A DNA stretch of 63,583 nt, the filler included, from Octopus bimaculoides (lineage: Eukaryota), in the NCBI RefSeq assembly GCF_001194135.2. It is 7 parts of 7 records of this genome, joined end to end, with 100 filler letters (N's around TTAATTAATTAA, not from the genome) between each part and the next. Parts side by side here need not be neighbours in the genome. Positions count along the whole stretch, not along the records: positions 43,064 to 55,859 come from NC_068995.1; 6 more parts are not named here. One strand, 5' to 3'. This document shows positions 42,868 to 55,859 of this stretch, piece by piece. Both the position numbers and the translations under genes were made by a program. The notes beneath the pieces were generated by a model. That model searched no databases. It had not been told where the DNA came from and worked only from the letters and a program-made list of their open reading frames with translations. Within the stretch, counting starts at the first letter, position 1. The number at the start of each line of letters is the position of its first letter.

Positions 42868-43103
42868 TAATTTTAGGGAAAATAACCAAGTTTCAAGAAC
42901 TCATCGATGAAAATCCACTATCACATGTAGAAAAATTAACAATTAAAAGGACAATAAATGAGTNNNNNNNNNNNNNNNNNNNNNNNNNNNNNNNNNNNNN
43001 NNNNNNNTTAATTAATTAANNNNNNNNNNNNNNNNNNNNNNNNNNNNNNNNNNNNNNNNNNNNACCATTTTGAGCGTGGCCGTTGCCAGTACCGCCTGAC
43101 TGG

Positions 43104-43395
43104 CTCCCGTAGGATTTTCGAGCGAGATCGTTGCCAGTGCCCCTGGACTGGCTTGTGCGGGTGGCACATAAAAGACACCATTTCGAGCGTGGCCGTTTTC
43201 GTGCGGGTGACACGTAAAAGCACCCACTACACTCTCTGAGTGGTTGGCGTTAGGAAGGGCATCCAGCTGTAGAAACTATGCCAAATTAGACTGGAGCCTG
43301 GTGTTGCCATCCGGTTTCACCAGTCCTCAGTCAAATCGTCCAACCCATGCTAGCATGGAAAGCGGACGTTAAACGATGATGATGATGTTGATGAT
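43104..43395 (+). mobile_element. Retroposon family C with (GAT)n tail (RTE-type 3' end). Other copies: 12526-12748(+), 48035-48187(+), 51070-51255(+), 54740-55085(-), 10290-10460(-)
   Basis: Repeated gagtggttggcgttaggaagggcatccagctgtagaaact...gcatggaaagcggacgttaaacgatgatgatg. Confidence 0.8.
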
Positions 43396-45065
43396 ATATA
43401 TATATATGCATGTATTTATATAGTAATGATATTATATAAATATATATAAAAGTACACACACACACATATATAAATATGTATATATATGTATGTATAGGGT
43501 TTTTTGGAAGTATGTGAATGTGTGTGTGAGATTAATTGGTTATTTAAGAGGTGTGTGTACAGAGCAGGTGTCTTGGATGTGAGAGTAGGTGTGCATCTGT
43601 GTATATATATATATAACATATATAGAATATATACATAACACACATATATAAGTGCATACGTATGTGCGCACAGGCATAGGTATATAAATGTGTATGTTTC
43701 TATATGAATAGTGAATGTGTAGGAGGTGTGTATATATATATATATGTATAGGTCCAACCCATGCCAGCATGGAAAGCGGACGTTAAACGATGATGATGAT
43801 GATGATGATATATATATACATGTGTAAACTGCTTGTCTATGTATGCGTAGTGTCTATATGGATATATGCGTGAGTGTTTAGGAGGTGTGTGTTTATGTGT
43901 GAGAGGTGCGTGTATGTGTGTTAGTATGACAGTAATTAAGCTATTTTAGTCAAGTGACAATAAAATATAATAAACATTTTGAGTGTATATCGAGGTGACA
44001 TATGGTGTATACAAGTCATTTTATATACACAAGTACACTATAAAAATACAAGAGCTACTTTTATGCACACACACAGGTACCGTGCACTGGTGTGTATAAC
44101 AAGTACGTTAAGATACTTCTAGAAAGTACCAGTCTGAGGGGTACTTTAATATGCACAAACACAGGGTGTCTCTGTGATATGATGTGACAGGGGTACAATA
44201 TAACGCCCCTTGTCTGAGAACTGACCCAGAGAGAGAGAGAGAGAGAGAAAGAGGAGGGAGGGAGAGAGAGAGAGAAAGAGGAGGGAGGGGGAGAGAGAGA
44301 GAGAAAGAGGAGGGAGGGAGAGAGAGAGAGATGGTTTTTCTGGCAAAGGAGAATACCATTAGTTTTGTTGCTAAACAAAATTTTCTCTTATGTAAGACAA
44401 CATCAATGAATGGTAATAACTTGTTATAATATGTATTCGTCCATCAGACTCAATTAACCATTAGTCATAGTGGGTCCCACTCTTACATAAACAGGAGCTG
44501 TGCAAACAAAGAGGGTACTCAGTTGCTAATGAAATCCCAATAAAGGATTGAAACTAATCTGGCTGAGACCTTCTTTGGCCAAGAAGACAAGGTTTAGTAA
44601 TGGCTAAAACTCTGCAGTACATAATAGCATCCTATATCTTTTATCGTTTACTTGTTCCAGTCATTAGACTGTGGCCATGCTGGGGCACTACCTTGAAGAA
44701 TTTTTTAGTTGAATGAATTGAGCCCAGGACTTATTTTTTTTTGTTTTTGTAAACCTGATACTTATTCTATCAGTCTCTGTTGCTGAACTGCTAAGCCATG
44801 GGATGTAAACACACCAACACTGGTTGTCAAGCAGCAGAGGGACACGCACAATGGGCTTTCCAGTTTCTGTCTATCAAATCCACTTAAAAGGATTTGGTCA
44901 GCCTGTGTCTATAATAAAAGACACTTGCCCAAAGTGCCATGCAGTGGGTCTGAACCTGGAACCATGTGATTCAAAAGTAAACTTCTTACCACACAGCCAC
45001 ACTTGCACTGCACGAACACACAAACATACATCCACACACACTGTATTTGAGTGAAATTGTTTTAC

Positions 45066-45236
45066 CTCTGTAAGTGAGAAAATCCTGCAAGATGTCCAAC
45101 ATCCGTGTCATCTGCGAAAACATCAACACTTTATGTCCAGCGTTCTTCAGATGTTGCAATAACTGATCAATTAGTTCCAACTTGCCACTAGAATTAACCA
45201 GATGCTCTCCAATTTCAAATGGTTCCTCTTCAATAC
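45066..45236 (-). CDS. CHD1L: CHD1L exon (171 bp): [57 protein letters not shown]; last visible exon
   Basis: ttctctag acceptor and G|gtaaaa donor; the EPFExGxHL..SGKL..LD signature distinguishes CHD1L from other SNF2 proteins; motif [13 protein letters not shown]. Confidence 0.95.
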
Positions 45237-45989
45237 CTAGAGAATTTGTCAATTGAAAATAATTAATTGGATCATCTCTTTCAGAATTCCACAGAACTGA
45301 TGATCCAATATCTTTAATCCAACAAGGTACAAAGCTATTTTGTAATTTCAATTCCTTTGTTATCACATTTCTGTTGAAGTAAATCAATTTTTTATTCATT
45401 TTGAAAAGAACAAAGAATTTAGTTAAATAAACTAGGGTTTGGAACGTAAAATTAAAATGAAATTTTGAAAGTTTTAGTTAAGATCATTTTAAAACATCAG
45501 GTTTGAATCATAGAACCAAGAATGGTTTAGGAAAGGTTAGTTTCAGAAGGATTAAATGAATTCATATAAAATGGTGTGTCTTGTCTAAGGTACACTTTAA
45601 CAATCACGATATTGTTGACGTCAGATATTCTTTTCTACTCTAGGCACAAGGCCTGAAATTCTGGGGGAGGGGGCCAGTCGATTAGATTGACCTCAGTACG
45701 CAACTGGTACTTAATTTATCGACCCTGAAAGGATGAAAGGCAAAGTCCACCTCAGTGGAATTTGAACTGTGTTTCTTTCAATTACTTCAAATACAACAAA
45801 GAATCTAGTAAAATAACTAAGTTATCATTCAGCTAGTGTGATAACTAAATTGTGACTAAGGTTTGGTGGAAGATTTTAATTCAAAACTTTTGGAAACAAG
45901 ACATTCGTATTACAGAGCCAGAAATGGTCTCAGCCAGGTTGGTATCAAAAGGGTTAAACACACAATCAAAGTGATCTGGAAGCTCCTTC

Positions 45990-46420
45990 TTCACAATCCA
46001 GATTATAGGCTCCGTACAGAAAGATGTTCTTGATAAATGCATTGAAGAAGGCTAGCCTTGTTGATTTTGAAATAATTGCCAGATGCTCTGAAATTTATTG
46101 CAAACACTCCAGCTCAATTATTGTGTGACAGGAAATCTTTCTCATTGTTAAAATGCAAAGGTACTTGACTGAGGTCACTGACTCGTTCGAGTTGAAGGCC
46201 ACTGTAGGAACCAACTGGTTGGCAGCTTACATTCTCATCGACAGCCACTGCACAGCACTGAGAAAAAGACTGACTCTGGTGACAACATTCTGAAGTCTTG
46301 GCACATGGCACAATCGATAAGCTGTGAGGGTGAGATCATCGACATGGTCAGGGTCTGAGAGACACCAGTTCTCATAAGTTCTACTAAATGGTAAGGTCTT
46401 TGTGTTGCAGGGCCTAGATA
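45990..46420 (-). mobile_element. Highly degraded LINE reverse-transcriptase fragment in a CHD1L intron
   Basis: DHVDDLTLTA..LQNVV resembles the YADD region; LERVSD and ...CIYQEHLSVRSL occur downstream in shifted frames. Confidence 0.4.
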
Positions 46421-47164
46421 TTCTTTTAGGCTTTTACTTGGTTCAATCATTTGACTGCGGCCATGCTGGAGCACTGCCTCGAAGAATTTTAGTCAAATGA
46501 ATTAACTCCGGCACTTAATTATTTCAAGCCTTGTATTTATTGGTCTCTTTTGCTGAACTGCTAAGTTACGAGAATGTAAACACTAACACCAACTGTCAAG
46601 TGGTGGTGGGAGACAAACACACATTATATACATGACAGGCTTCTTTCAGTTTCCCATCAACCAAATCCATTCACAAGGCTTTGCTTGGCTTGAGGCAACA
46701 GAAAATACTTGCTTGAGGTGCCACGCAGTGGGACTGAACCTAGAATCGTGATTAGGAAGCAAACCTCTTACAACAGAGCCCCGCCTGCAACTACGATATG
46801 TTGATGTATCTATATGTAGAGTGGTGTGTCTTGTCTAAGGTTTAACACTCTTGTTATCATAATACTGATGGCGTTAGGTAAGTTCGATATCTGTATAGAG
46901 TGGTGTATCTTGCCTAAGGGTTAACATTTTAGCAATTATAAAAGGTAACAATCCCAGTTTGTATTCTTAACAGCCAGGTGGACTGAGGTGAGATAGAATT
47001 AAATATGTTGACCAAACACCTTAGGATATGGTTCCTTTAGAATACCAGACCTGATCCCCATCCTGTCATGTTAGTTGGAAGTGATCAAGTTCAATCATGT
47101 GACTTCAGCAAACAGTGATGTACTGTGAGAAGGAAAGAATAGAAAGAGAGGAAGAAGAAAAAAG

Positions 47165-47232
<68 letters not shown>

Positions 47233-47302
47233 CTGGGGGAATGAAGAGGGGAGGGGGGAGAGAAAAGAAGAAATGTCAGAGTAACATTATATATACACTC
47301 AC

Positions 47303-47410
47303 CATCAAACAAGTAAGGATGGTTAACACATTTGCGAAGCTGTATAAAAATATTCATCATGTTATGTTGGCTGCGATCACCAGGTGCACAGCTGCTACTG
47401 AGGAATGCCG
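47303..47410 (-). CDS. CHD1L: CHD1L exon (108 bp): TAFLSSSCAPGDRSQHNMMNIFIQLRKCVNHPYLFD
   Basis: ttgcag acceptor and G|gtgagt donor; QLRKCxNHPYLF motif. Confidence 0.95.
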
Positions 47411-48000
47411 CTGCAATTGGGAAATAAAACATGCAGGTTTTAGTGTTTTTGTGAAGGCGACGGGCAATACTTGTGCAGTCGTCTCTCTTGCACACCACAT
47501 CTGATTCCTCTTGTGCCAACCTTTTCTCTCAAGATGCTTACACTCTGTCAAACATGCACAATGACATTGCACATCCAGCAACGCATACTGATTTCATGTC
47601 TTTCAAGCCTACGCATGTCCTCGGCTGTCACAGCCCATGCTTCACTGCCATGCAGCATAGCTGTTTGCACACAAGCATCAAAGGCGCATATATATATATA
47701 TATATATATANNNNNNNNNNNNNNNNNNNNNNNNNNNNNNNNNNNNNNNNNNNNNNNNNNNNNNNNNNNNNNNNNNNNNNNNNNNNNNNNNNNNNNNNNN
47801 NNNNNNNNNNNNNNNNNNNNNNNNNNNNNNNNNNNNNNNNNNNNNNNNNNNNNNNNNNNNNNNNNNNNNNNNNNNNNNNNNNNNNNNNNNNNNNNNNNNN
47901 NNNNNNNNNNNNNNNNNNNNNNNNNNNNNNNNNNNNNNNNNNNNNNNNNNNNNNNNNNNNNNNNNNNNNNNNNNNNNNNNNNNNNNNNNNNNNNNNNNNN

Positions 48001-48033
<33 letters not shown>

Positions 48034-48449
48034 ATCTAATTTGGCAGAGTTTCTACAGCTGGATGCCCTTCCTAACGCCAACCACTTGGAGCCTGGTGTA
48101 GCCATCCGGTTGCACCAGTCCTCAGTCAAATCGTCCAACCCATGCTAGCATGGAAAGCGGACGTTAAACGATGATGATGATGATGATATATATATATATA
48201 CACACACACACACATGCATATATACCTGCAGTATACTACCAACACAAAACCTTGCAGTTGTTTCTACCTCACTATGAACTCAAAGTTATGGTACCTGGCC
48301 AATCCTGGAGTCCTATGTGTTGATGTGCATAGATTCTAACACAGACAGACAGGCATACCCTCAGTTAAACAAACAAATAGACTGGTAAGTAACCAGATAG
48401 ACAAACAGCATCTCCAAACCTCAAATCAAGACAAAAAACAGCCCCTTAC

Positions 48450-48605
48450 TGTGATCCTTGGTGAGAATGGCTTTGTAGAGTTTCTTCTGTAATGCCGAGA
48501 GTCCATGAAAGAGAACAACTTCAGATTTGTTGGGGAGGTCAAGGACGGATTCCTTCACCCGGCGCAGCAGGAATGGTTTCAATATCTGATGCAACTCAGA
48601 CGTGG
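48450..48605 (-). CDS. CHD1L: CHD1L exon (156 bp): [52 protein letters not shown]
   Basis: tttttcag acceptor and A|gtaagg donor; phases 1/1 fit the flanking exons; [16 protein letters not shown] is CHD1L-like. Confidence 0.95.
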
Positions 48606-48719
48606 CTGAAAAATCAAACAAGGAATTTCATGAAGTGGTTTATTTCAGTTTATATTTTTATAGGGGTTGTTCCTGTTATTCTATGAGTCAAAAACATTCT
48701 AGCTATAACCATGCCATTG

Positions 48720-48880
48720 TTTGAGTACAACAATGAACCAGATATGTTGGTCGTTAGCTCGTTAGCCATTTCTTTTCTAAGGCTCAGTGTCCTGAGATTA
48801 GCCTTCAATATTTTGTCCCATGTCTTCCTGGTCTCCCTCTTCCACAAGTTCCATCCACTTCAAAGGATTGGCATTTCTGG
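48720..48880 (-). mobile_element. RTE LINE C-terminal fragment
   Basis: [21 protein letters not shown] resembles the RTE terminal pattern GRPRKTW...DLR.L.L. Confidence 0.5.
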
Positions 48881-49012
48881 ATGCAACATATAATGTGTGT
48901 GTGTGTGTGTGTGTGTGCGCATGTGTGTGTGTGTATGTGTGTGTGCAGATGGATGGGTCAATATAGCTAGCAAGATAAACAGACAAATGGATATGGATAG
49001 ATAAGTGTTCAC

Positions 49013-49169
49013 CTTTTTTGTCGGTTTGCGTTTGATATTTCTCAACAAAATAATCCTTCAGTTTCATGGGAAAAATCAGTTCAGAGACAAAATTTAACAA
49101 GGAAAATAATTCTTGGAGATTATTCTGGACTGGTGTTCCAGTCAACAGGATTCTTTGATGGACATTCCA
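49013..49169 (-). CDS. CHD1L: CHD1L exon (157 bp): [52 protein letters not shown]
   Basis: ttccag acceptor and G|gtgaac donor; motif [17 protein letters not shown]. Confidence 0.95.
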
Positions 49170-49420
49170 CTGGAACAGATAACGGTAACCATTTTAAACA
49201 CACATTTCATAACCATTTAATATTTCATGACCACACGAAATACATTTCAAATACATATTCAAAAGTCAACAAGAAACACACCTCACAACAGCCACGAGTA
49301 TTTCACAATTACACACACATCACAACTACAAACATTTCTCCGACTCAAATGACCCTGACCACATTCTTTCAAACACTGACCACACACACAAGGACACTGA
49401 TCTCTGTGTGTGTAAATAAC

Positions 49421-49532
49421 CTTCCTGTGATCCCACTATATCTCTTGTGTCCATAGCTAGCACTGGGAATTTCTAATTCCATATTCAGTGCAAACTATGG
49501 ACACACAAGAGATACAGTGGAAACACAGGAAG
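49421..49532 (-). other. 112-nt imperfect hairpin in a CHD1L intron
   Basis: Arms cttcctgtgatcccactatatctcttgtgtccatagctagcactgggaat and attccatattcagtgcaaactatggacacacaagagatacagtggaaacacaggaag around a 5-nt loop. Confidence 0.8.
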
Positions 49533-51627
49533 CTTAACAGAGAGAAACAGTCTTTGAATGTGGAAGATGCACAGGAGAAATACATGCTAAAGACATACAG
49601 AAAATGGATTTTTCTCAAATGTCCAGGAGGTTCCCTAAGAAACCTAATTAGCAGTGGAGGAGAATAGTTATTAGAATAAGAAGAGGATGGAGAAAGTTCA
49701 GAGATTGTTTGCCAACATAACGTGGCAGTCCTGGTTTAGGATGAATGTTGCTGTAATTTAGCCCCAGGAGACATTGTCTCCAGCTGGCTATATGACACGA
49801 TCTGTGTCCTTAAAGGCCAAAATTATTTGAAGTTTTCTAAGAATTTCACCTCAAATAAATGTTTCTAAATCATCATTTAGACAATATAGTATATTTACTG
49901 AATGAATCTTTCATCAATCATAACTGTGGTAAATTCAGTGAAGTTTATGCTTAGCTGAGGAGGTCAACATAATAAAGAAACATGTTGAAACATGCCAATG
50001 TACTTGCTAGAAAATTAAGATATTACGAGTCATTCATCCTTTACTTCAAAGTTCGATTGCACAATAAATAGATAAGGATTAGCCGCAGGAAAGGTATCAA
50101 GCTGTAAAATGAGACCTCAATGATATTTAATACCTTTGTCTAACCCATGCTGAGAAACAACTGACTAAAGTAGTTTTATTTTTCTCCACATAATCATTTT
50201 TAATTAACTTTTTAACAGTAACTTACCTGTCGATCAATCAGACCACCAAATTATTTCAAGTTGGTTAACTTTTTACAACTCTCTGTATTAAATAAGTCAA
50301 CACTAACTTATCTCTGTTCCATTTTACATTCAGAATATAGCACAAAACATTCAGCACCAGGTAAATAAAACATCCAAAGTTTCAGAGGAATCACACCAGG
50401 TGTTTGTTTAGAAAATATAAATGGATGTGCCGTTCACACACCCAAACACATTTAACACAACACAGACAAACACATACACAGAGATTTATTAAGACGAAGG
50501 AAGACATGTGCTGCAACTCACAAGAATACACGTGTTGAAGAACAATCTCTATGTTTGTGTGTGTGTGTGCGCACACACACACACACACACAGAGGAGGAT
50601 TCAGAAATCCTTTTACTGCTTAAATGAGATACAGAAATATTCTATTACATTTTTGTTTTTATTTATATATTTTTTATGCTGTCTTTGCAATTTTATTTAA
50701 TATATATATATGGGCACAGGAGTGGCTGTGTGGTAAGTAGCTTGCTTACCGACCACATGGTTCCGGGTTCATTCCCACTGCGTGGCACCTTGGGCAAGTG
50801 TCTTTACTTTAGCCTCGGGCCGACCAATGCCTTGTGAGTAGATTTGGTAAACAGAAACTGAAGGAAGTCTGTTGTATATATGTATCTGTATATATGTATG
50901 TGTGTGTATATGTTTGTGTGTCTGTGTTTGTCCCCCCCCCCCCATCGCTTGACAACCGATGGTGGTGTGTTTNNNNNNNNNNCCCCCCCATCGCTTGACA
51001 ACCGATGGTGGTGTGTTTACGTCCCTATAACTTAGTGGTTTGGCAAAAGAGACCGATAGAATAAGTACTAGGCACTGGTACCACATAAAAAGCATCCAGT
51101 ATACTCTGTGGAATGGTTAGCATTAAGAAGGGCGTTCAGCTGTAGAAACAATGCCTCAACAGACAGCTGGAGCCTGGTGCAGTCCCTAGCCTTACCAGTT
51201 CCAGTCAAGCTCTCCAACCCATACCAGTATGGAAAATGGACATTAAATGATGATGTATACACACATACTAACATATATTCTCTATGTGTGTGTGTATTCT
51301 TAAACAAGTATGTTGTTGACAGTGACTTCCCAGTTTTGGTCAGCAAGCTATCGTTGAATAGTCCGACAATGGCTTAGCTAGCCAAAACTTCGAAGTCACT
51401 GACAATAATATGCTTGTTTAAGACGAAGAAATTTGTATTCTACAAAAGTATAGAGTAACCGATCAGATTTATGTAAAAGTGTTTCCATTGTAACTGAACA
51501 TAAAAACAAAAATACATATACACAACACACATAGGTAACCTTCAAATACACAGAGAATGTATGAAGGAGTGTATAATATGAAGAGTGTATAATATGTGAA
51601 GAGTGTATAATATGAAGAGTAACTTAC

Positions 51628-51738
51628 TGAAACTAGAGTGGACCTGAGCATAGAGTCTTGGCTCTTCAGTCGGTGACCTTCATCGACAACCATCAAATGC
51701 CAAGATATCCTTTTCAGAAGCTCGTCTCGAAGACAAAT
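51628..51738 (-). CDS. CHD1L: CHD1L exon (111 bp): ICLRDELLKRISWHLMVVDEGHRLKSQDSMLRSTLVS (Walker B, DEGH)
   Basis: ttcctttTCAG acceptor and TCA|gtaagt donor; 37 codons; SNF2 motif II. Confidence 0.95.
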
Positions 51739-52639
51739 CTGAAAAGGAAAGAAAGAAATCATCAGCAACCTACCAGATCAGCTGACAGACCTAACCTATA
51801 ATCAAAGGTAATCCAGCTTTGACCATCCCATCTGTAAGTTATTACATATCCTGGATGGGTATTTCTCCTTGGCATTCTAAGATGAAATTCCAGCATAAAA
51901 TGTAGAAAAAAACTCATTAAACTCTAATTAGAAATAAATGATGTCCCTGGAGAAAAGTATTAAGGGACGTAATAGGGAGGTAATGGCAACCGTTAGGTTT
52001 GAACTCAAGACTTTTTTGTTTGTAGTTACGTAATCTTAATCTCACTGTGATTGTGCCTCATAAGTTTGCATTCGTCTTTGCATGGGTCTTCTCCAGAACA
52101 ATATTTGTAACGGTCATTTGGTCATTCGCTTCAAGAAGGTCAGGTTCCTGAGATTAATCTTCATTTCCTCTCAGGTTTCCTTAGGTCTTCCTCTTCTACA
52201 GGTTCCTTCCACCTGGATTGGTCACCATCGTTATCATTATTGCTTTAACATCCACTTTGGACGAGACTTTGATCCACCAGTATTTCATGGACAGATTACC
52301 CTTCCTGTTATCAATCCTTATAAATAAAGTTAGAAGATTTAGCTTTTGTACTTCTAAGATCTGAACTCAAAATTCTGCTGAAGAAGCTTTACTTATTGGT
52401 GTTCTGAGCCCAAATAAGTACCAGTTATATACTGTGACTATTCAAATAAATTTTTTAAACTTTTACACAAGGGGAAAATCTGCTTCGACAAATTCTGTCT
52501 GACCCATACTAGCATGGAAAAGTGGATGTTCATGATGACGATGACTATTTTATAAATCTGAAAACTGAATGTGATCTGTGTTGCCATGGATACATTCAAG
52601 CTCCACCCACTCCAATTTGAACAGAACATCCCAACTTAC

Positions 52640-52769
52640 CTCATATGTTGTTAACAGGACATCTAGGGAGGCATCTGCATCTGTTGCCGTGGAAACCATC
52701 TTCTCCAGAATCTCTTGCCGTGTATTCTTTTCTCCAATCAAACATTTCACTTTCAAATTGGGAGAAAAC
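52640..52769 (-). CDS. CHD1L: CHD1L exon (130 bp): (R)FSPNLKVKCLIGEKNTRQEILEKMVSTATDADASLDVLLTTYE
   Basis: ccag acceptor and GAG|gtaagt donor; SNF2 'DVLLTTYE' motif; phase 0 join to the next exon. Confidence 0.9.
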
Positions 52770-54220
52770 CTGGTTTGTTGAGGCAGTGATGATGATGATG
52801 ATGATGATAAAGTGTTGAGTGGAGAAGACAAGAAGAGAGGATGGAGACAATGTCAGTCAAATGATAATTAATGACAAAATTCTAAGGCCTTAATTAACCC
52901 ACAACATCTTGTATAACATGAATCAACCCAACAGTGCAATTATCCCTCAGTCTTAAAACCATCGAATCAAACCAGTCTCCTGTGAACTCTAATCTAAACG
53001 AAGAAACCATTCTTCTGTCCTTTATTTATATTATTTAATATTTGCTATTAAAATTAAGATGTGTGTTTGTTGTTGAATGGCCAGGATTTATTTTCAGAGA
53101 TTTCTTACCTCTCAAATTCCAATTGCCAATTTTCCAGCACTGATCGTGGACAGATAACAATGTCAGGTTTTTGAATCTTCTCTGTTTTGCGTAGGAACAA
53201 AATACATGCAATCGTCTGTGGAAAAAAACAAACAAAAATATGAAATTAAATTGCAGAACTTGACAACCTCTCTAATGATGGTGCCACAATAAAACATGAT
53301 CAGTACATGTTGTAAAGTGAATGGTAAATGAATGGAGAAGGTGTGAGGTTTATAAACTTCTCTAGCATTGGTGTCATGAAAATGTACCCAGTACATACTG
53401 TGAAGTGAATGGCAGATGGGTGAAGAAAGTAAGGGTTTGAGGTCCCATCAATCTTGTCTTGTGGAGGGATTATAATTCTTCTAGGGCTGGCACAACTCTG
53501 TAAAGTGACTGACAAGAGAAAGGGTGTCCAGCTATAGAAACGAACTTAAAAAGTGACAGATATGAACACCAGTCTATGAGAGCAGTGGCTCCCAATAAGA
53601 ACTCAGATTGTAATGCTTCCTCTAACTCATGCCAGCATGGAAAGCAGACATACAAATGATGGTGATGATGATGATGAACTATCTTGTCTAAAAATCAAAC
53701 ATTCTCTATTGCTAACTATTAATCTAGAAATCCATTTCAAGCAGCTGGAACCAAGTTTTCAGCACAGCCAGGCTTAAGAGGAAGCCAGCAGCTGTGTCAG
53801 GCAATGCCTGATACACTTACAACTTCAGCACTTTAAAACGTTCAACATATTTAACAGATTAAAAAGATATCAAAACATTTTTGGTTTAATATTTTGTTTC
53901 TCTCTCTCTCTCTCTCTCTCTAAACCCAGAAGAAATTTACTGTTATAACTTCCAACCTGCTTTCTCGACTTATTTCCTGTTTCCTATTTAACAGTTTCTC
54001 ATTTATTGAAATTCCTTAATCAGTTTTTCAATTGGTTAACTCTTTCCAGATAAACTATTCTGTAGTTTCTTCAATGAAGAAAAACACTGAACCAATTCTA
54101 TGAGCAACTTGACACTGGCTTGTCTGGTGTCTCTGCAAACCAACACATTATCACCATCATCATCATCCTGTTCCTTATCACAGTCATCTTCAACATTGTT
54201 ATCATGGCTTCACACACTCA

Positions 54221-54350
54221 GTTTTCTTCTAATTCAGAAGTGAAATGTTTGATTAGAGAGAATACATAGCAACAGATTCAGGATAAAATGGTTTCCCTGG
54301 CAACAGACACAGATATCACCTCCTTGACATCCTGATAACAAGATACCAGG
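54221..54350 (+). pseudogene. Inverted, decayed copy of the CHD1L 52640-52769 exon
   Basis: TTT TCT TCT AAT TCA GAA GTG AAA TGT TTG ATT AGA GAG AAT ACA TAG CAA CAG ATT CAG GAT AAA ATG GTT TCC CTG GCA ACA GAC ACA GAT aligns with the exon's sense sequence; contains a stop, indels and a lost donor. Confidence 0.9.
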
Positions 54351-55161
54351 CTGTTATTAAATTTTCTGCAAAAACAAAAGGTGAACATCTCTCTCTATAT
54401 ATTTAATTACACACACACACATACATACATATTGGGGGTGGCCCCGTGGGGGCTTGCTTACCACAGAGTTTCACGTTCTGTCCCACTGTGCAACACCTTG
54501 GGCAAGTATCTTCTGCAACAGCTGTCTACCAAATCCACTCACATGGCTGATCAAAGCCTTGTCAGAGGATTTCATATACAAAAACTGACAGGAGCCCACT
54601 GTATCATCATCATCATCGTTTAACGTCCGTCCTCCATGCTGGCATGGGTGAAACGGTTTGACAGTAGCCGGCCAGGCGGAAGCTTGCACCAGACTTCTGT
54701 GACTGTTTTGGCAGGGTTTTTACAGTTGGATGATGATCATCATCATCGTTTAACGTCCGCCTTCCATACTAGCATGGGTTGGACGATTTGACAGAGGACT
54801 GGTGAAACCAGATGGCTGCAACAGGCTCCAATCTGATCTGGCAGAGTTTCTACAGCTGGATGCTCTTCCTAACGCCAACCACTCAGAGAGTGTAGTGGGT
54901 GCTTTTACGTGCCACCGGCACGAGGGCCAGTCCGGTGGTACTGGCAACGTCCACGCTCAAATGGTGTTTTTTACATGCCACCTTCACAGGAGCCAGTCCA
55001 GTGGCACTGGCAACGACCTCGCTCGAATGTTTTTTCACATGCCAGTCAGGCGACACTGGTAACAATCACGCTCAAATGGTGCTTTTTACATGCCACATCT
55101 ACACCACCACTGCTACCATGTGGTTGCTCAACCTGCTAAAAATAGCAGCCAACTGCCTTAA

Positions 55162-55376
55162 CCCTTTCGTTATTGTATTTATTTTGCGATGCTCTTTGTT
55201 TCTTCAAATTAATTTTAAACATAACAAACAGTTTAGTAAAATAACTTAGTTATCATTTAGCTAGCGTTAAGAACATAAATTGTGACTAAGGTTTGGTGGA
55301 AGATTTTAATTCAAAACTTATGAAAACAAGACATTTGTACTCTGAGCCAGTTTCGGCTGGGTTGGTAACAAAAGGG
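55162..55376. mobile_element. piggyBac-type MITE; related partial copy ~45770-45957
   Basis: TTAA on both sides (55158-55161, 55377-55380) with ccctt...aaggg ends. Confidence 0.75.
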
Positions 55377-55559
55377 TTAAACAAATCAGGTGACATATGA
55401 CAATGTAGTACTTGATAGACCATGACTGCAAATAAAACTGGATGGTCATAGTCGGAACACCTTTGATTATGGGTCAATCAGGAAAGACATGGAACTAAAC
55501 AACAACAGACTGTCAAGAAAGGTAATTAACAGATTGAAGTATTTAGATAATTAAATCTG

Positions 55560-55859
55560 ACATCACAAAAGAAACAGGCTTGGAAGGACTGGAAGAACGG
55601 TGGTAGCAGGGAATTGTACCAATGTGCCAGAAGGGAGGCTAGGCGACAGGTTTATTTAGCCAGAGGGGAAGCAGATAAGGAAAGATTTGCCAATGTTCTG
55701 CGCCGTGAGGACCAAAGACTCGAGGTATTTCGTGTTGCAAGACAGTGTAGGAGAGAGAATAGTGATGTTGTAGGAGAGAAATGTGTTCGCATGGATGATG
55801 GTACGCTTGCATTAAATGAGGATGCAAAGAAAGAGGTCTGGAGATGCCACTACGATAGA
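55560..55859 (+). mobile_element. RTE-clade LINE fragment (endonuclease-RT linker)
   Basis: AWKDWKNGGSRELYQCARREARRQVY...VVGEKCVRMDDGTLALNEDAKKEVWRCHY. Confidence 0.75.

What the first reader, a model, noticed from the sequence alone, without database searches (positions are those of the whole stretch)
52640..54350. Inverted decayed duplicate of a CHD1L coding exon 1.45 kb away in the upstream intron
Seen: 54221-54350 (+) aligns codon-for-codon with the 52769-52640 (-) exon at roughly 75-80% identity by eye, and similarity extends ~100 bp into the upstream (CAT)n intron flank (from ~54115). In the CHD1L pre-mRNA this copy is antisense to the exon, so the two can form a ~130-230-bp imperfect duplex covering the whole exon and its 3' splice site. 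Established: ADAR recoding relies on intronic editing-complementary sequences, and coleoids recode extensively. Inference: an exon-derived ECS made by local inverted duplication, which could drive recoding or skipping in ATPase lobe 1 and suggests a general route to new editing sites.
Basis: partly seen in the sequence, partly recalled or inferred. Interest (0 to 1): 0.72.

Follow-up and report, generated by a model that had tools for sequence, protein, structure and literature searches.

The report
Decayed inverted exon copy in CHD1L intron
A roughly 200-base stretch containing one coding exon of the chromatin remodeller gene CHD1L was copied backwards into an intron 1.45 kb upstream and has since decayed like junk DNA; it could still pair with the real exon in the unspliced RNA, but nothing here shows that the cell uses that pairing.

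Summary
Window 54221-54350 (+) is an inverted, decayed copy of the 130-nt CHD1L exon at 52640-52769 (-). Identity is 77.5% counting gaps; alignment score is 111 against at most 32 for shuffled exons. Homology continues through the 3' splice site and an (ATC)n microsatellite to about 52830/54128.

Two corrections. The alignment has three indels, so it is not strictly codon-for-codon. Another coding exon (53109-53215) lies between the arms, so the copy sits in the next intron up, not the adjacent one.

The copy looks like neutrally decaying DNA:
- it has stop codons;
- mismatches fall 11/5/8 over codon positions;
- both CpGs are lost and GC has drifted to intron level;
- the intronic flank is more diverged (69%) than the exon part (80.5%).

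The arms can still form a dominant duplex: 162 bp, -209 kcal/mol against -95 for shuffles. In a 2-kb fold, 112 of 130 exon bases pair with the copy, and both splice sites are covered.

Editing, splicing effects, conservation and even the taxon could not be tested. The best reading is a neutral relic of a small local inverted duplication that probably acts as an incidental double-stranded RNA. A selected editing element is possible but unsupported.

The parts
52640..52769 (-). CHD1L coding exon A (130 nt, phase-2 start; SNF2 ATPase lobe 1, between motif Ia and the DExH box); the parent of the copy and the 3' arm of the RNA duplex
   Evidence: Splice sites and frame; CHD1L identity; 112 of 130 nt pair with the copy in the 2-kb fold
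52770..52830 (-). Last ~61 nt of the intron between exons B and A, including an (ATC)n microsatellite (52786-52811) and the 3' splice site; also duplicated
   Evidence: I2, I6; 34 of 49 non-microsatellite aligned positions identical
54221..54350 (+). Decayed inverted copy of exon A (pseudo-exon). It reads in the exon's sense on the + strand, so it is antisense within the minus-strand CHD1L pre-mRNA. It has stop codons and -3/+3/-1 indels, and homology fades at 54346-54350
54128..54220 (+). Copy of the intron flank, with a decayed and expanded (ATC)n tract and the former acceptor ...ACTCAG
   Evidence: (I6, I10, I12, I13)
53109..53215 (-). CHD1L coding exon B (107 nt, motif Ia region), lying inside the 1297-nt loop between the two arms; it has no copy of its own
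52831..54127 (-). Loop between the arms (1297 nt): the rest of intron B-A, exon B and the 3' part of the upstream intron. It contains SINE-like repeats but no further homology between its two halves
   Evidence: inner alignment score 20, against a shuffle mean of 22.5

Best explanation
This is a relic of a small, local, DNA-level inverted duplication. A segment of about 190-220 bp was copied in reverse orientation 1.45 kb away. It held the last ~61 nt of an intron, an (ATC)n microsatellite and the whole 130-nt exon A of CHD1L. It landed in the intron upstream of the preceding exon B. The likeliest cause is template switching during replication or repair, but that is inferred. The copy has never been coding and has drifted as neutral intronic DNA, while the parent exon stayed under protein constraint. 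That difference is why the exon part is still about 80% alike and the flank about 69%. As a by-product, the CHD1L pre-mRNA carries two arms, 1.3 kb apart, that can form a ~160-bp imperfect duplex. It resembles a diverged inverted Alu pair: helices of up to 22 bp broken by mismatches and bulges. The duplex buries exon A and both of its splice sites and loops out exon B. I consider it most likely an unselected, incidental double-stranded RNA. If the animal has high nuclear ADAR activity, it probably attracts scattered low-level A-to-I editing in both arms, rather than acting as a tuned site-selective editing or splicing element. Shown here: the duplication, its limits, its decay pattern and its pairing capacity. 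Inferred: the mechanism of origin, neutrality, and any editing.
For: The copy includes intron sequence and the acceptor site, so it was copied from genomic DNA or unspliced RNA, not from mRNA. Homology is confined to this segment: nothing further on the inner side, no copy of exon B, only an unrelated SINE match on the outer side, and no exon C sequence after the copy. Only 1 of the 7 exons in the piece has such a copy. Decay signatures are: stop codons and three indels; mismatches at codon positions 1/2/3 of 11/5/8, with no third-position excess; 11 of 16 transitions AT-ward in the copy, CpG count 2 to 0, and GC 41.5% to 37.7% against intron values of 34-37%; and a flank at 34/49 = 69% against the exon part at 99/123 = 80.5%, as expected if only the exon is constrained. 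A longest exact run of 17 nt is not unusual at this identity (P = 0.45). Pairing capacity: cofold gives -208.8 kcal/mol against -94.9 +/- 4.8 for shuffled arms, with 162 intermolecular pairs. In a 2001-nt fold, 161 pairs link the arms, the mean probability that an exon A base pairs with the copy is 0.85, and forbidding the copy costs 164 kcal/mol.
Against: The neutrality tests have little power: about 24 substitutions, Fisher p = 0.16, binomial p = 0.21. They cannot exclude weak selection for pairing. Eleven of the 16 transition mismatches are G:U-compatible on the sense transcript, the direction that selection for pairing would favour, but this is not significant and is equally explained by AT-ward drift. 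A duplex that hides both splice sites of a frame-shifting exon (130 nt) in an essential domain might be expected to be harmful, yet it has persisted through ~20% divergence. So it is either harmless in vivo or useful. Homology ends within about 4 nt of the exon's 5' splice site, which is an odd coincidence for a random DNA breakpoint.
Confidence: 0.6

Rival explanations
1. One reading: the copy is a functional, selected editing-complementary sequence. It pairs with exon A in the pre-mRNA and directs ADAR to recode specific codons in CHD1L ATPase lobe 1.
For: The duplex is thermodynamically dominant and covers the exon. Of the 42 adenosines in exon A, 36 are base-paired and 29 would recode if edited; one (52753, K to E) sits opposite a C. 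Intronic partners kilobases away are an established mechanism (PMC5705066; PMC3479170, listed).
Against: There is no sign of constraint on the copy. The single A:C site has a disfavoured 5' G. No CHD1L editing record was found. Squid ADAR2 can edit mature mRNAs without intron sequence, and more than 70% of squid sites are edited more in the axon than in the cell bodies (PMC7192619). The taxon is unverified. CHD1L is a DNA-damage-response remodeller, not a typical neural recoding target (my own knowledge).
Confidence: 0.08
2. A long-range RNA structure that modulates splicing. Pairing hides exon A's splice sites and loops out exon B, which would promote skipping of a frame-shifting exon (unproductive isoforms) or back-splicing of exon B into a circular RNA.
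For: The 3' splice-site G and the 5' splice-site GU of exon A are paired in the minimum-free-energy fold. The arms flank exon B, which is the geometry that favours looping-out or circularisation. Exon A is 130 nt and exon B is 107 nt, so both shift the frame if skipped.
Against: No transcript data are available. The arrangement sends mixed signals, because it both loops out exon B and blocks the acceptor it would be joined to. There is no evidence of selection. Both exons encode indispensable ATPase motifs.
Confidence: 0.1
3. The copy had a different origin: it was captured or carried by a mobile element, or reverse-transcribed from a partly processed RNA ending at the exon's 3' end, rather than made by a local DNA template switch.
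For: Homology stops within about 4 nt of the 5' splice site, and an A-rich run (AAAAACAAAA, 54369-54378) follows about 20 nt later. Interspersed repeats begin at about 54436, and a LINE-like ORF lies at 55551-55859.
Against: No target-site duplication or clear poly(A) tail is visible. No exon C sequence follows the copy, as it would in a spliced template. The copy lies 1.45 kb from its parent inside the same gene, which favours a local event. No other copy of the adjoining 53923-54127 sequence is present in the piece.
Confidence: 0.1
4. A hairpin-RNA locus: the duplex is diced into endogenous siRNAs that feed back on CHD1L.
For: Hairpin RNAs whose arms derive from exons of a parental gene are known in Drosophila; one example has ~200 bp of homology to an exon of its parental gene (PMC10317233).
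Against: Those hairpins are near-perfect, whereas this one is ~77% with helices of at most 22 bp. Here one arm is the gene's own exon inside its own pre-mRNA. No small-RNA data are available.
Confidence: 0.03
5. A chance similarity or an assembly artefact.
For: The piece contains assembly gaps (47711-48000 and 50973-50982).
Against: The score is 111 against a shuffle maximum of 32, and BLASTN gives E = 2.5e-25. The copy is ~20% diverged with indels, which mis-assembly does not produce. The gaps are more than 1.6 kb away.
Confidence: 0.01

Closest known systems
Intronic editing-complementary sequences (ECS) of ADAR targets, e.g. GluA2 Q/R and R/G, Gabra3 distant element, Drosophila Syt1
   Same: An intronic element in the same pre-mRNA, complementary to a coding exon, which can lie kilobases away and form an imperfect duplex with it (PMC5705066; PMC3479170, listed).
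   Different: Known ECS elements are defined by observed editing and by conservation. They are usually short (tens of nt) and are not recognisable as copies of the exon. This element is a ~200-bp recognisable pseudo-exon, with no editing data and no sign of constraint, and it lies two introns upstream with another exon in the loop.
Inverted Alu (or other repeat) pairs in introns forming long imperfect dsRNA
   Same: About 160-300 bp of ~75-85% complementary duplex within one pre-mRNA. Such pairs are incidental ADAR substrates with scattered editing, and they can affect exon inclusion and circular RNA formation (PMC2533698, listed; PMC5705066).
   Different: Here one arm is a conserved, constitutive coding exon and not a repeat. 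Any promiscuous editing would therefore hit coding sequence, and the duplex hides real splice sites.
Hairpin RNAs / microRNA genes born by inverted duplication of target-gene sequence
   Same: An inverted duplication of an exon segment creates an RNA duplex homologous to the parent gene (PMC10317233; also Allen et al. 2004 for Arabidopsis miRNAs, cited from my own knowledge).
   Different: Those loci are separate transcription units with two derived arms, are near-perfect when young, and act in trans through Dicer. Here the parent exon is itself one arm, within the host gene's own transcript.
Small intragenic inverted duplications from replication-based template switching (FoSTeS/MMBIR-type events)
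   Same: A short segment is copied in inverted orientation a kilobase or so from its source, ignoring exon-intron structure. PMC4303224 (listed) describes replication-based rearrangements in DMD.
   Different: Those are usually recent pathogenic events with readable junction microhomology. This one is old (~20% diverged), fixed in the assembly, and its junctions are no longer legible.

Membership tests
ADAR editing-complementary sequence (ECS) | Complementary to the exon region and able to form dsRNA with it | tested here: met
   162 intermolecular pairs at -208.8 kcal/mol, against -94.9 +/- 4.8 for shuffles. The pairing persists in the 2-kb context with mean probability 0.85. These are thermodynamic predictions only.
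ADAR editing-complementary sequence (ECS) | Lies in the same primary transcript as the exon | tested here: met
   Exon B begins at a 3' splice site at CHD1L residue ~67, and no motif-I exon lies in 53216-55859. The transcript must therefore start upstream of the copy. This is inferred from gene structure, not from RNA data.
ADAR editing-complementary sequence (ECS) | A-to-I editing observed at exon sites within the duplex | not testable with these tools
   No RNA-seq is available. CHD1L is absent from the held cephalopod editing papers and supplements, and the main coleoid data set is not held.
ADAR editing-complementary sequence (ECS) | Editing depends on the element (deletion or mutation) | not testable with these tools
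   This requires a minigene or genome-editing experiment.
ADAR editing-complementary sequence (ECS) | Element conserved above the intron background, or co-varying with the exon | tested here: inconclusive
   No orthologous locus could be obtained. The within-locus pattern fits neutral decay but has low power.
Processed (retro)pseudogene fragment | Lacks intron sequence; has a poly(A) tail and target-site duplication | tested here: not met
   The copy carries at least 61 nt of intron plus the acceptor site. It is not followed by exon C sequence, and only a weak A-rich run lies nearby.
Neutral pseudo-exon from a local inverted segmental duplication | Homology spans coding and non-coding parent sequence, is inverted, and is nearby | tested here: met
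Neutral pseudo-exon from a local inverted segmental duplication | Loss of reading frame and an unconstrained substitution pattern | tested here: met
   Stop codons and indels; codon positions 11/5/8; CpG 2 to 0; GC drift to intron level; flank at 69% against exon at 80.5%.
Hairpin-RNA / endo-siRNA locus | Long near-perfect inverted repeat yielding Dicer-dependent small RNAs | tested here: not met
   The duplex is ~77% complementary with a longest helix of 22 bp. Small-RNA output could not be tested.
Reverse-complementary intronic matches that drive exon circularisation | Complementary sequences on both sides of the circularised exon | tested here: met
   The arms flank exon B, but the downstream arm extends into exon A. 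No back-splice evidence is available.
CHD1L / ALC1 (host gene) | SNF2 ATPase most similar to CHD1L rather than to other Snf2 subfamilies | tested here: met
   293 bits (E = 2e-86) to human CHD1L over residues 67-373, against 234 bits for ISWI. The top named database hits are CHD1L.
CHD1L / ALC1 (host gene) | C-terminal macro domain | not testable with these tools
   The piece ends within ATPase lobe 2, so the 3' part of the gene is outside it.

The most novel reading that the evidence does not exclude
The pseudo-exon is a selected, exon-derived editing-complementary sequence. A local inverted duplication of an exon instantly created a ready-made dsRNA partner, and later mismatches sharpened it from promiscuous to site-selective editing (or to temperature- or tissue-dependent exon skipping) in the CHD1L ATPase. 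The same route, exon to inverted intronic pseudo-exon, would then be a recurrent source of new recoding sites in coleoids. It would have been overlooked because published scans require at least 80% identity.
Probability: 0.07. Interest if true: 0.75.

Novelty: new member of a known kind. Interest (0 to 1): 0.38.

Why it matters
How editing-complementary sequences arise is poorly documented. An inverted copy of the exon itself would be the simplest possible origin, and it would give a concrete, datable example in which the partner's ancestry is still legible. The locus offers a cleanly testable case. It has one exon with a 160-bp partner and six sister exons without one in the same transcript, which serve as an internal control for editing and splicing. 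If the exon turns out not to be edited or skipped despite such a stable predicted duplex, that is informative too. It would show that long-range pairing across a spliced exon is ineffective in vivo. As it stands, the feature is most likely an ordinary neutral duplication relic.

Tried and rejected
(1) Orthologous loci: protein searches with the 79-aa and 297-aa exon translations found no cephalopod CHD1L. One search found nothing. In one search the hits were 35-63% identical (52-54% for the top five), all shorter than ~520 aa, and none was named as a cephalopod. A degenerate exon-A pattern against metagenome contigs found nothing. No comparative test was therefore possible.
(2) Taxon check: the LINE-like ORF at 55551-55859 matched only three unnamed short contigs. 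One is from assembly GCA_024449705.1, at ~76% DNA identity, and a literature search for that accession was empty. The interspersed repeats look like ones I remember from octopus genomes, but that is recollection, not a test.
(3) Published editing data: no held paper that mentions octopus or RNA editing also mentions CHD1L. The supplements of the metazoan editome study contain no CHD1L entry. The main coleoid editome paper is not held.
(4) A larger palindrome or a second copied exon: rejected.
(5) A spliced-RNA template, which would put exon C sequence after the copy: rejected.
(6) A hyper-edited retrocopy signature, meaning an excess of exon-A to copy-G changes: rejected. There is only 1 A-to-G against 7 G-to-A.
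(7) Known structured RNA at either arm: no Rfam match at either arm, and nothing in the piece reaches a gathering score. No tRNA-like SINE heads were found.
(8) My first self-BLAST with custom scoring missed the pair. Default BLASTN finds it, so the miss was a parameter artefact.
(9) Literature search for exon-derived ECS elements or inverted exon duplication: no direct precedent was found.

Full report
WHAT IS THERE. The usable piece (43064-55859) carries part of one gene on the minus strand. Stop-to-stop translation shows a chain of SNF2 ATPase exons, and I placed their splice sites. Exon B is 53109-53215, exon A is 52640-52769, and exon C is about 51628-51738. Exons D, E, F and G follow at about 49013-49169, 48447-48605, 47301-47370 and 45064-45231. 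Joined, they match human CHD1L/ALC1 residues 67-373 at 293 bits (E = 2e-86), well above ISWI at 234 bits. The best named database hits are also CHD1L.

THE OBSERVATION. The inverted repeat is real and lies at the stated coordinates. The repeat finder returns three collinear inverted pairs (I1, I2, I6). A gapped alignment joins them from 52853-52644 (-) to 54145-54345 (+), with 157 of 216 columns identical. For the exon alone, 100 of 129 columns are identical (77.5%), or 99 of 123 ungapped columns (80.5%). The score is 111, whereas 100 shuffled exons searched against the whole piece on both strands never exceeded 32. Default BLASTN reports 74.7% over 166 nt, E = 2.5e-25.

Three details need correcting. 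First, the copy carries -3, +3 and -1 nt indels and several stop codons, so it is not strictly codon-for-codon. Second, the flank homology reaches about 52830/54128. It passes through the acceptor site and an (ATC)n microsatellite that has expanded and decayed in the copy. Third, and most important, exon B lies between the two arms. The copy therefore sits in the intron upstream of exon B, not in the intron that abuts exon A.

LIMITS AND ORIGIN. Homology does not continue on the inner side: the alignment of the two halves of the loop scores 20 against a shuffle mean of 22.5. Exon B has no copy anywhere in the piece. On the outer side, the only match is a pair of ordinary SINE-like repeats. Nothing resembling exon C follows the copy. 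Of the seven exons, only exon A has a second copy. Because the copy includes at least 61 nt of intron and the acceptor, it is not a processed mRNA fragment. The simplest origin is a ~200-bp local inverted duplication at the DNA level, of the template-switch kind. At ~20% divergence the junctions can no longer be read, so this step is inference. One oddity remains. Homology fades within about 4 nt of the exon's 5' splice site, and an A-rich run lies ~20 nt beyond it. I therefore keep an RNA-mediated or transposon-mediated origin as a minor rival.

HOW THE COPY HAS EVOLVED. Everything measurable fits neutral decay of the copy alongside a constrained parent exon.
- Mismatches fall 11/5/8 on codon positions 1/2/3, with no third-position excess.
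- Eleven of the 16 transitions go from G/C in the exon to A/T in the copy.
- Both exon CpGs are lost in the copy.
- GC has fallen from 41.5% to 37.7%, towards the 34-37% of the surrounding introns.
- The non-microsatellite intron flank, where both copies are free to change, is 69% identical (34/49) and full of gaps. The exon part, where only the copy is free, is 80.5% identical. That is roughly the ratio expected without any selection on the copy.
- The longest exact run (17 nt) is unremarkable at this identity (P = 0.45).
- There is no excess of exon-A to copy-G changes that would mark an edited RNA template (1 against 7).
These tests rest on about 24 substitutions and are weak (Fisher p = 0.16; binomial p = 0.21). 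They fail to show selection for pairing, but they do not exclude it.

WHAT IT COULD DO IN RNA. Exon B opens with a 3' splice site at CHD1L residue ~67, and no motif-I exon lies between it and the end of the piece. The primary transcript must therefore run through the copy, which is antisense to exon A within it. Folded together, the arms give -208.8 kcal/mol against -94.9 +/- 4.8 for shuffled arms. There are 162 intermolecular pairs, in helices of up to 22 bp separated by mismatches and bulges. In a 2001-nt stretch of pre-mRNA, the minimum-energy structure still joins the arms with 161 pairs, and 112 of the 130 exon A bases pair with the copy. The mean probability that an exon A base pairs with the copy is 0.85. 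The acceptor G and the donor GU of exon A are paired. Forcing the copy to stay single-stranded costs 164 kcal/mol. The loop is 1297 nt and contains exon B.

In length and imperfection, the duplex resembles a diverged inverted repeat pair, the classic incidental ADAR substrate. It resembles much less the short, tuned ECS helices. Of the 42 adenosines in exon A, 36 are paired and 29 would change the amino acid if edited. The only A opposite C (52753, Lys to Glu) has an unfavourable 5' G. Both exon A (130 nt) and exon B (107 nt) shift the frame if skipped. Strong interference with splicing would therefore be costly, which argues that the structure is either rarely formed in vivo or tolerated.

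WHAT COULD NOT BE TESTED. I could not reach RNA data or an orthologous locus. The protein collection holds no cephalopod CHD1L, and a degenerate DNA pattern found nothing in metagenomes. Held cephalopod editing papers and supplements do not mention CHD1L, and the main coleoid editome paper is not held. The taxon is also unverified. A transposon ORF at the piece's edge hits only unnamed contigs at ~76% DNA identity. The interspersed repeats look octopus-like to me, but only from memory.

COMPARISON WITH WHAT IS KNOWN. The element works like an intronic complementary partner of an exon, so the ECS analogy is fair at the level of geometry. Membership cannot be claimed, however. The defining features are observed editing, dependence on the element and conservation, and all three are untested or inconclusive. 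Squid ADAR2 acts in the cytoplasm and axon, can edit mature mRNAs without intron sequence, and more than 70% of squid sites are edited more in the axon than in the cell bodies (PMC7192619). Genome-wide scans for nearby reverse-complement partners of edited sites already exist, but they require at least 80% identity (PMC9989829). This pair's full alignment would fail that filter. The closest evolutionary analogue is the birth of hairpin RNAs from inverted copies of exons of a parental gene (PMC10317233). Those are near-perfect, separate transcription units acting through Dicer. No known RNA family matches either arm.

VERDICT. This is a real, non-random, inverted pseudo-exon. It is best explained as a neutral relic of a small local inverted duplication that happens to give the CHD1L pre-mRNA a strong long-range duplex over a coding exon (confidence about 0.6). 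Interest is moderate. It is a tidy natural experiment with internal controls, but on present evidence it is an ordinary duplication relic.

Noticed in passing
window 51297-51423 and 49417-49536: Two near-perfect hairpins lie inside CHD1L introns. Their RNA minimum free energies are -57.4 (z = -9.6) and -76.2 kcal/mol (z = -13.4). Rfam gives only sub-threshold miRNA-like hits. They could be MITE-like palindromes or lineage-specific miRNA precursors, and they are much better dsRNA than the exon/copy pair.
   Followed up: partly
window 51213-51255, 52498-52548, 53621-53680 (+); 54603-54664, 54733-54794 (inverted): A SINE-like repeat family with a ...CCAGCATGGAAA...(ATG)n tail occurs several times in both orientations around the finding. 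These give further inverted pairs (I3, I4) nested outside the exon/copy pair.
   Followed up: partly
window 44912-45061, 46649-46834, 50628-50834, 54436-54600: A second interspersed repeat family (core ...GCACCTTGGGCAAGT.TCTTC...) is present. One copy starts ~85 nt beyond the pseudo-exon's end.
   Followed up: no
window 54903-55103 and 43064-43275: There are 66-nt tandem units (GCCAGTCCGGTGGTACTGGCAACG...). Similar sequence occurs in inverted orientation at the opposite end of the piece.
   Followed up: no
window 55551-55859 (+): An open reading frame resembling a retrotransposon protein, antisense to CHD1L, runs off the piece edge. Its nearest relatives are unnamed short contigs (61-71% aa identity; one from assembly GCA_024449705.1).
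   Followed up: partly
window 54346-54378: Homology of the pseudo-exon ends within about 4 nt of the position matching the exon's 5' splice site, and an A-rich run (AAAAACAAAA) follows ~20 nt later. This may be coincidence, or a hint of an RNA-templated origin.
   Followed up: partly
window 47711-48000 and 50973-50982; exons E/F (about 48447 and 47370): Assembly gaps are present. The reading frame does not join cleanly between exons E and F, so a short exon (human CHD1L ~residues 284-295) may lie in the 290-N gap.
   Followed up: no
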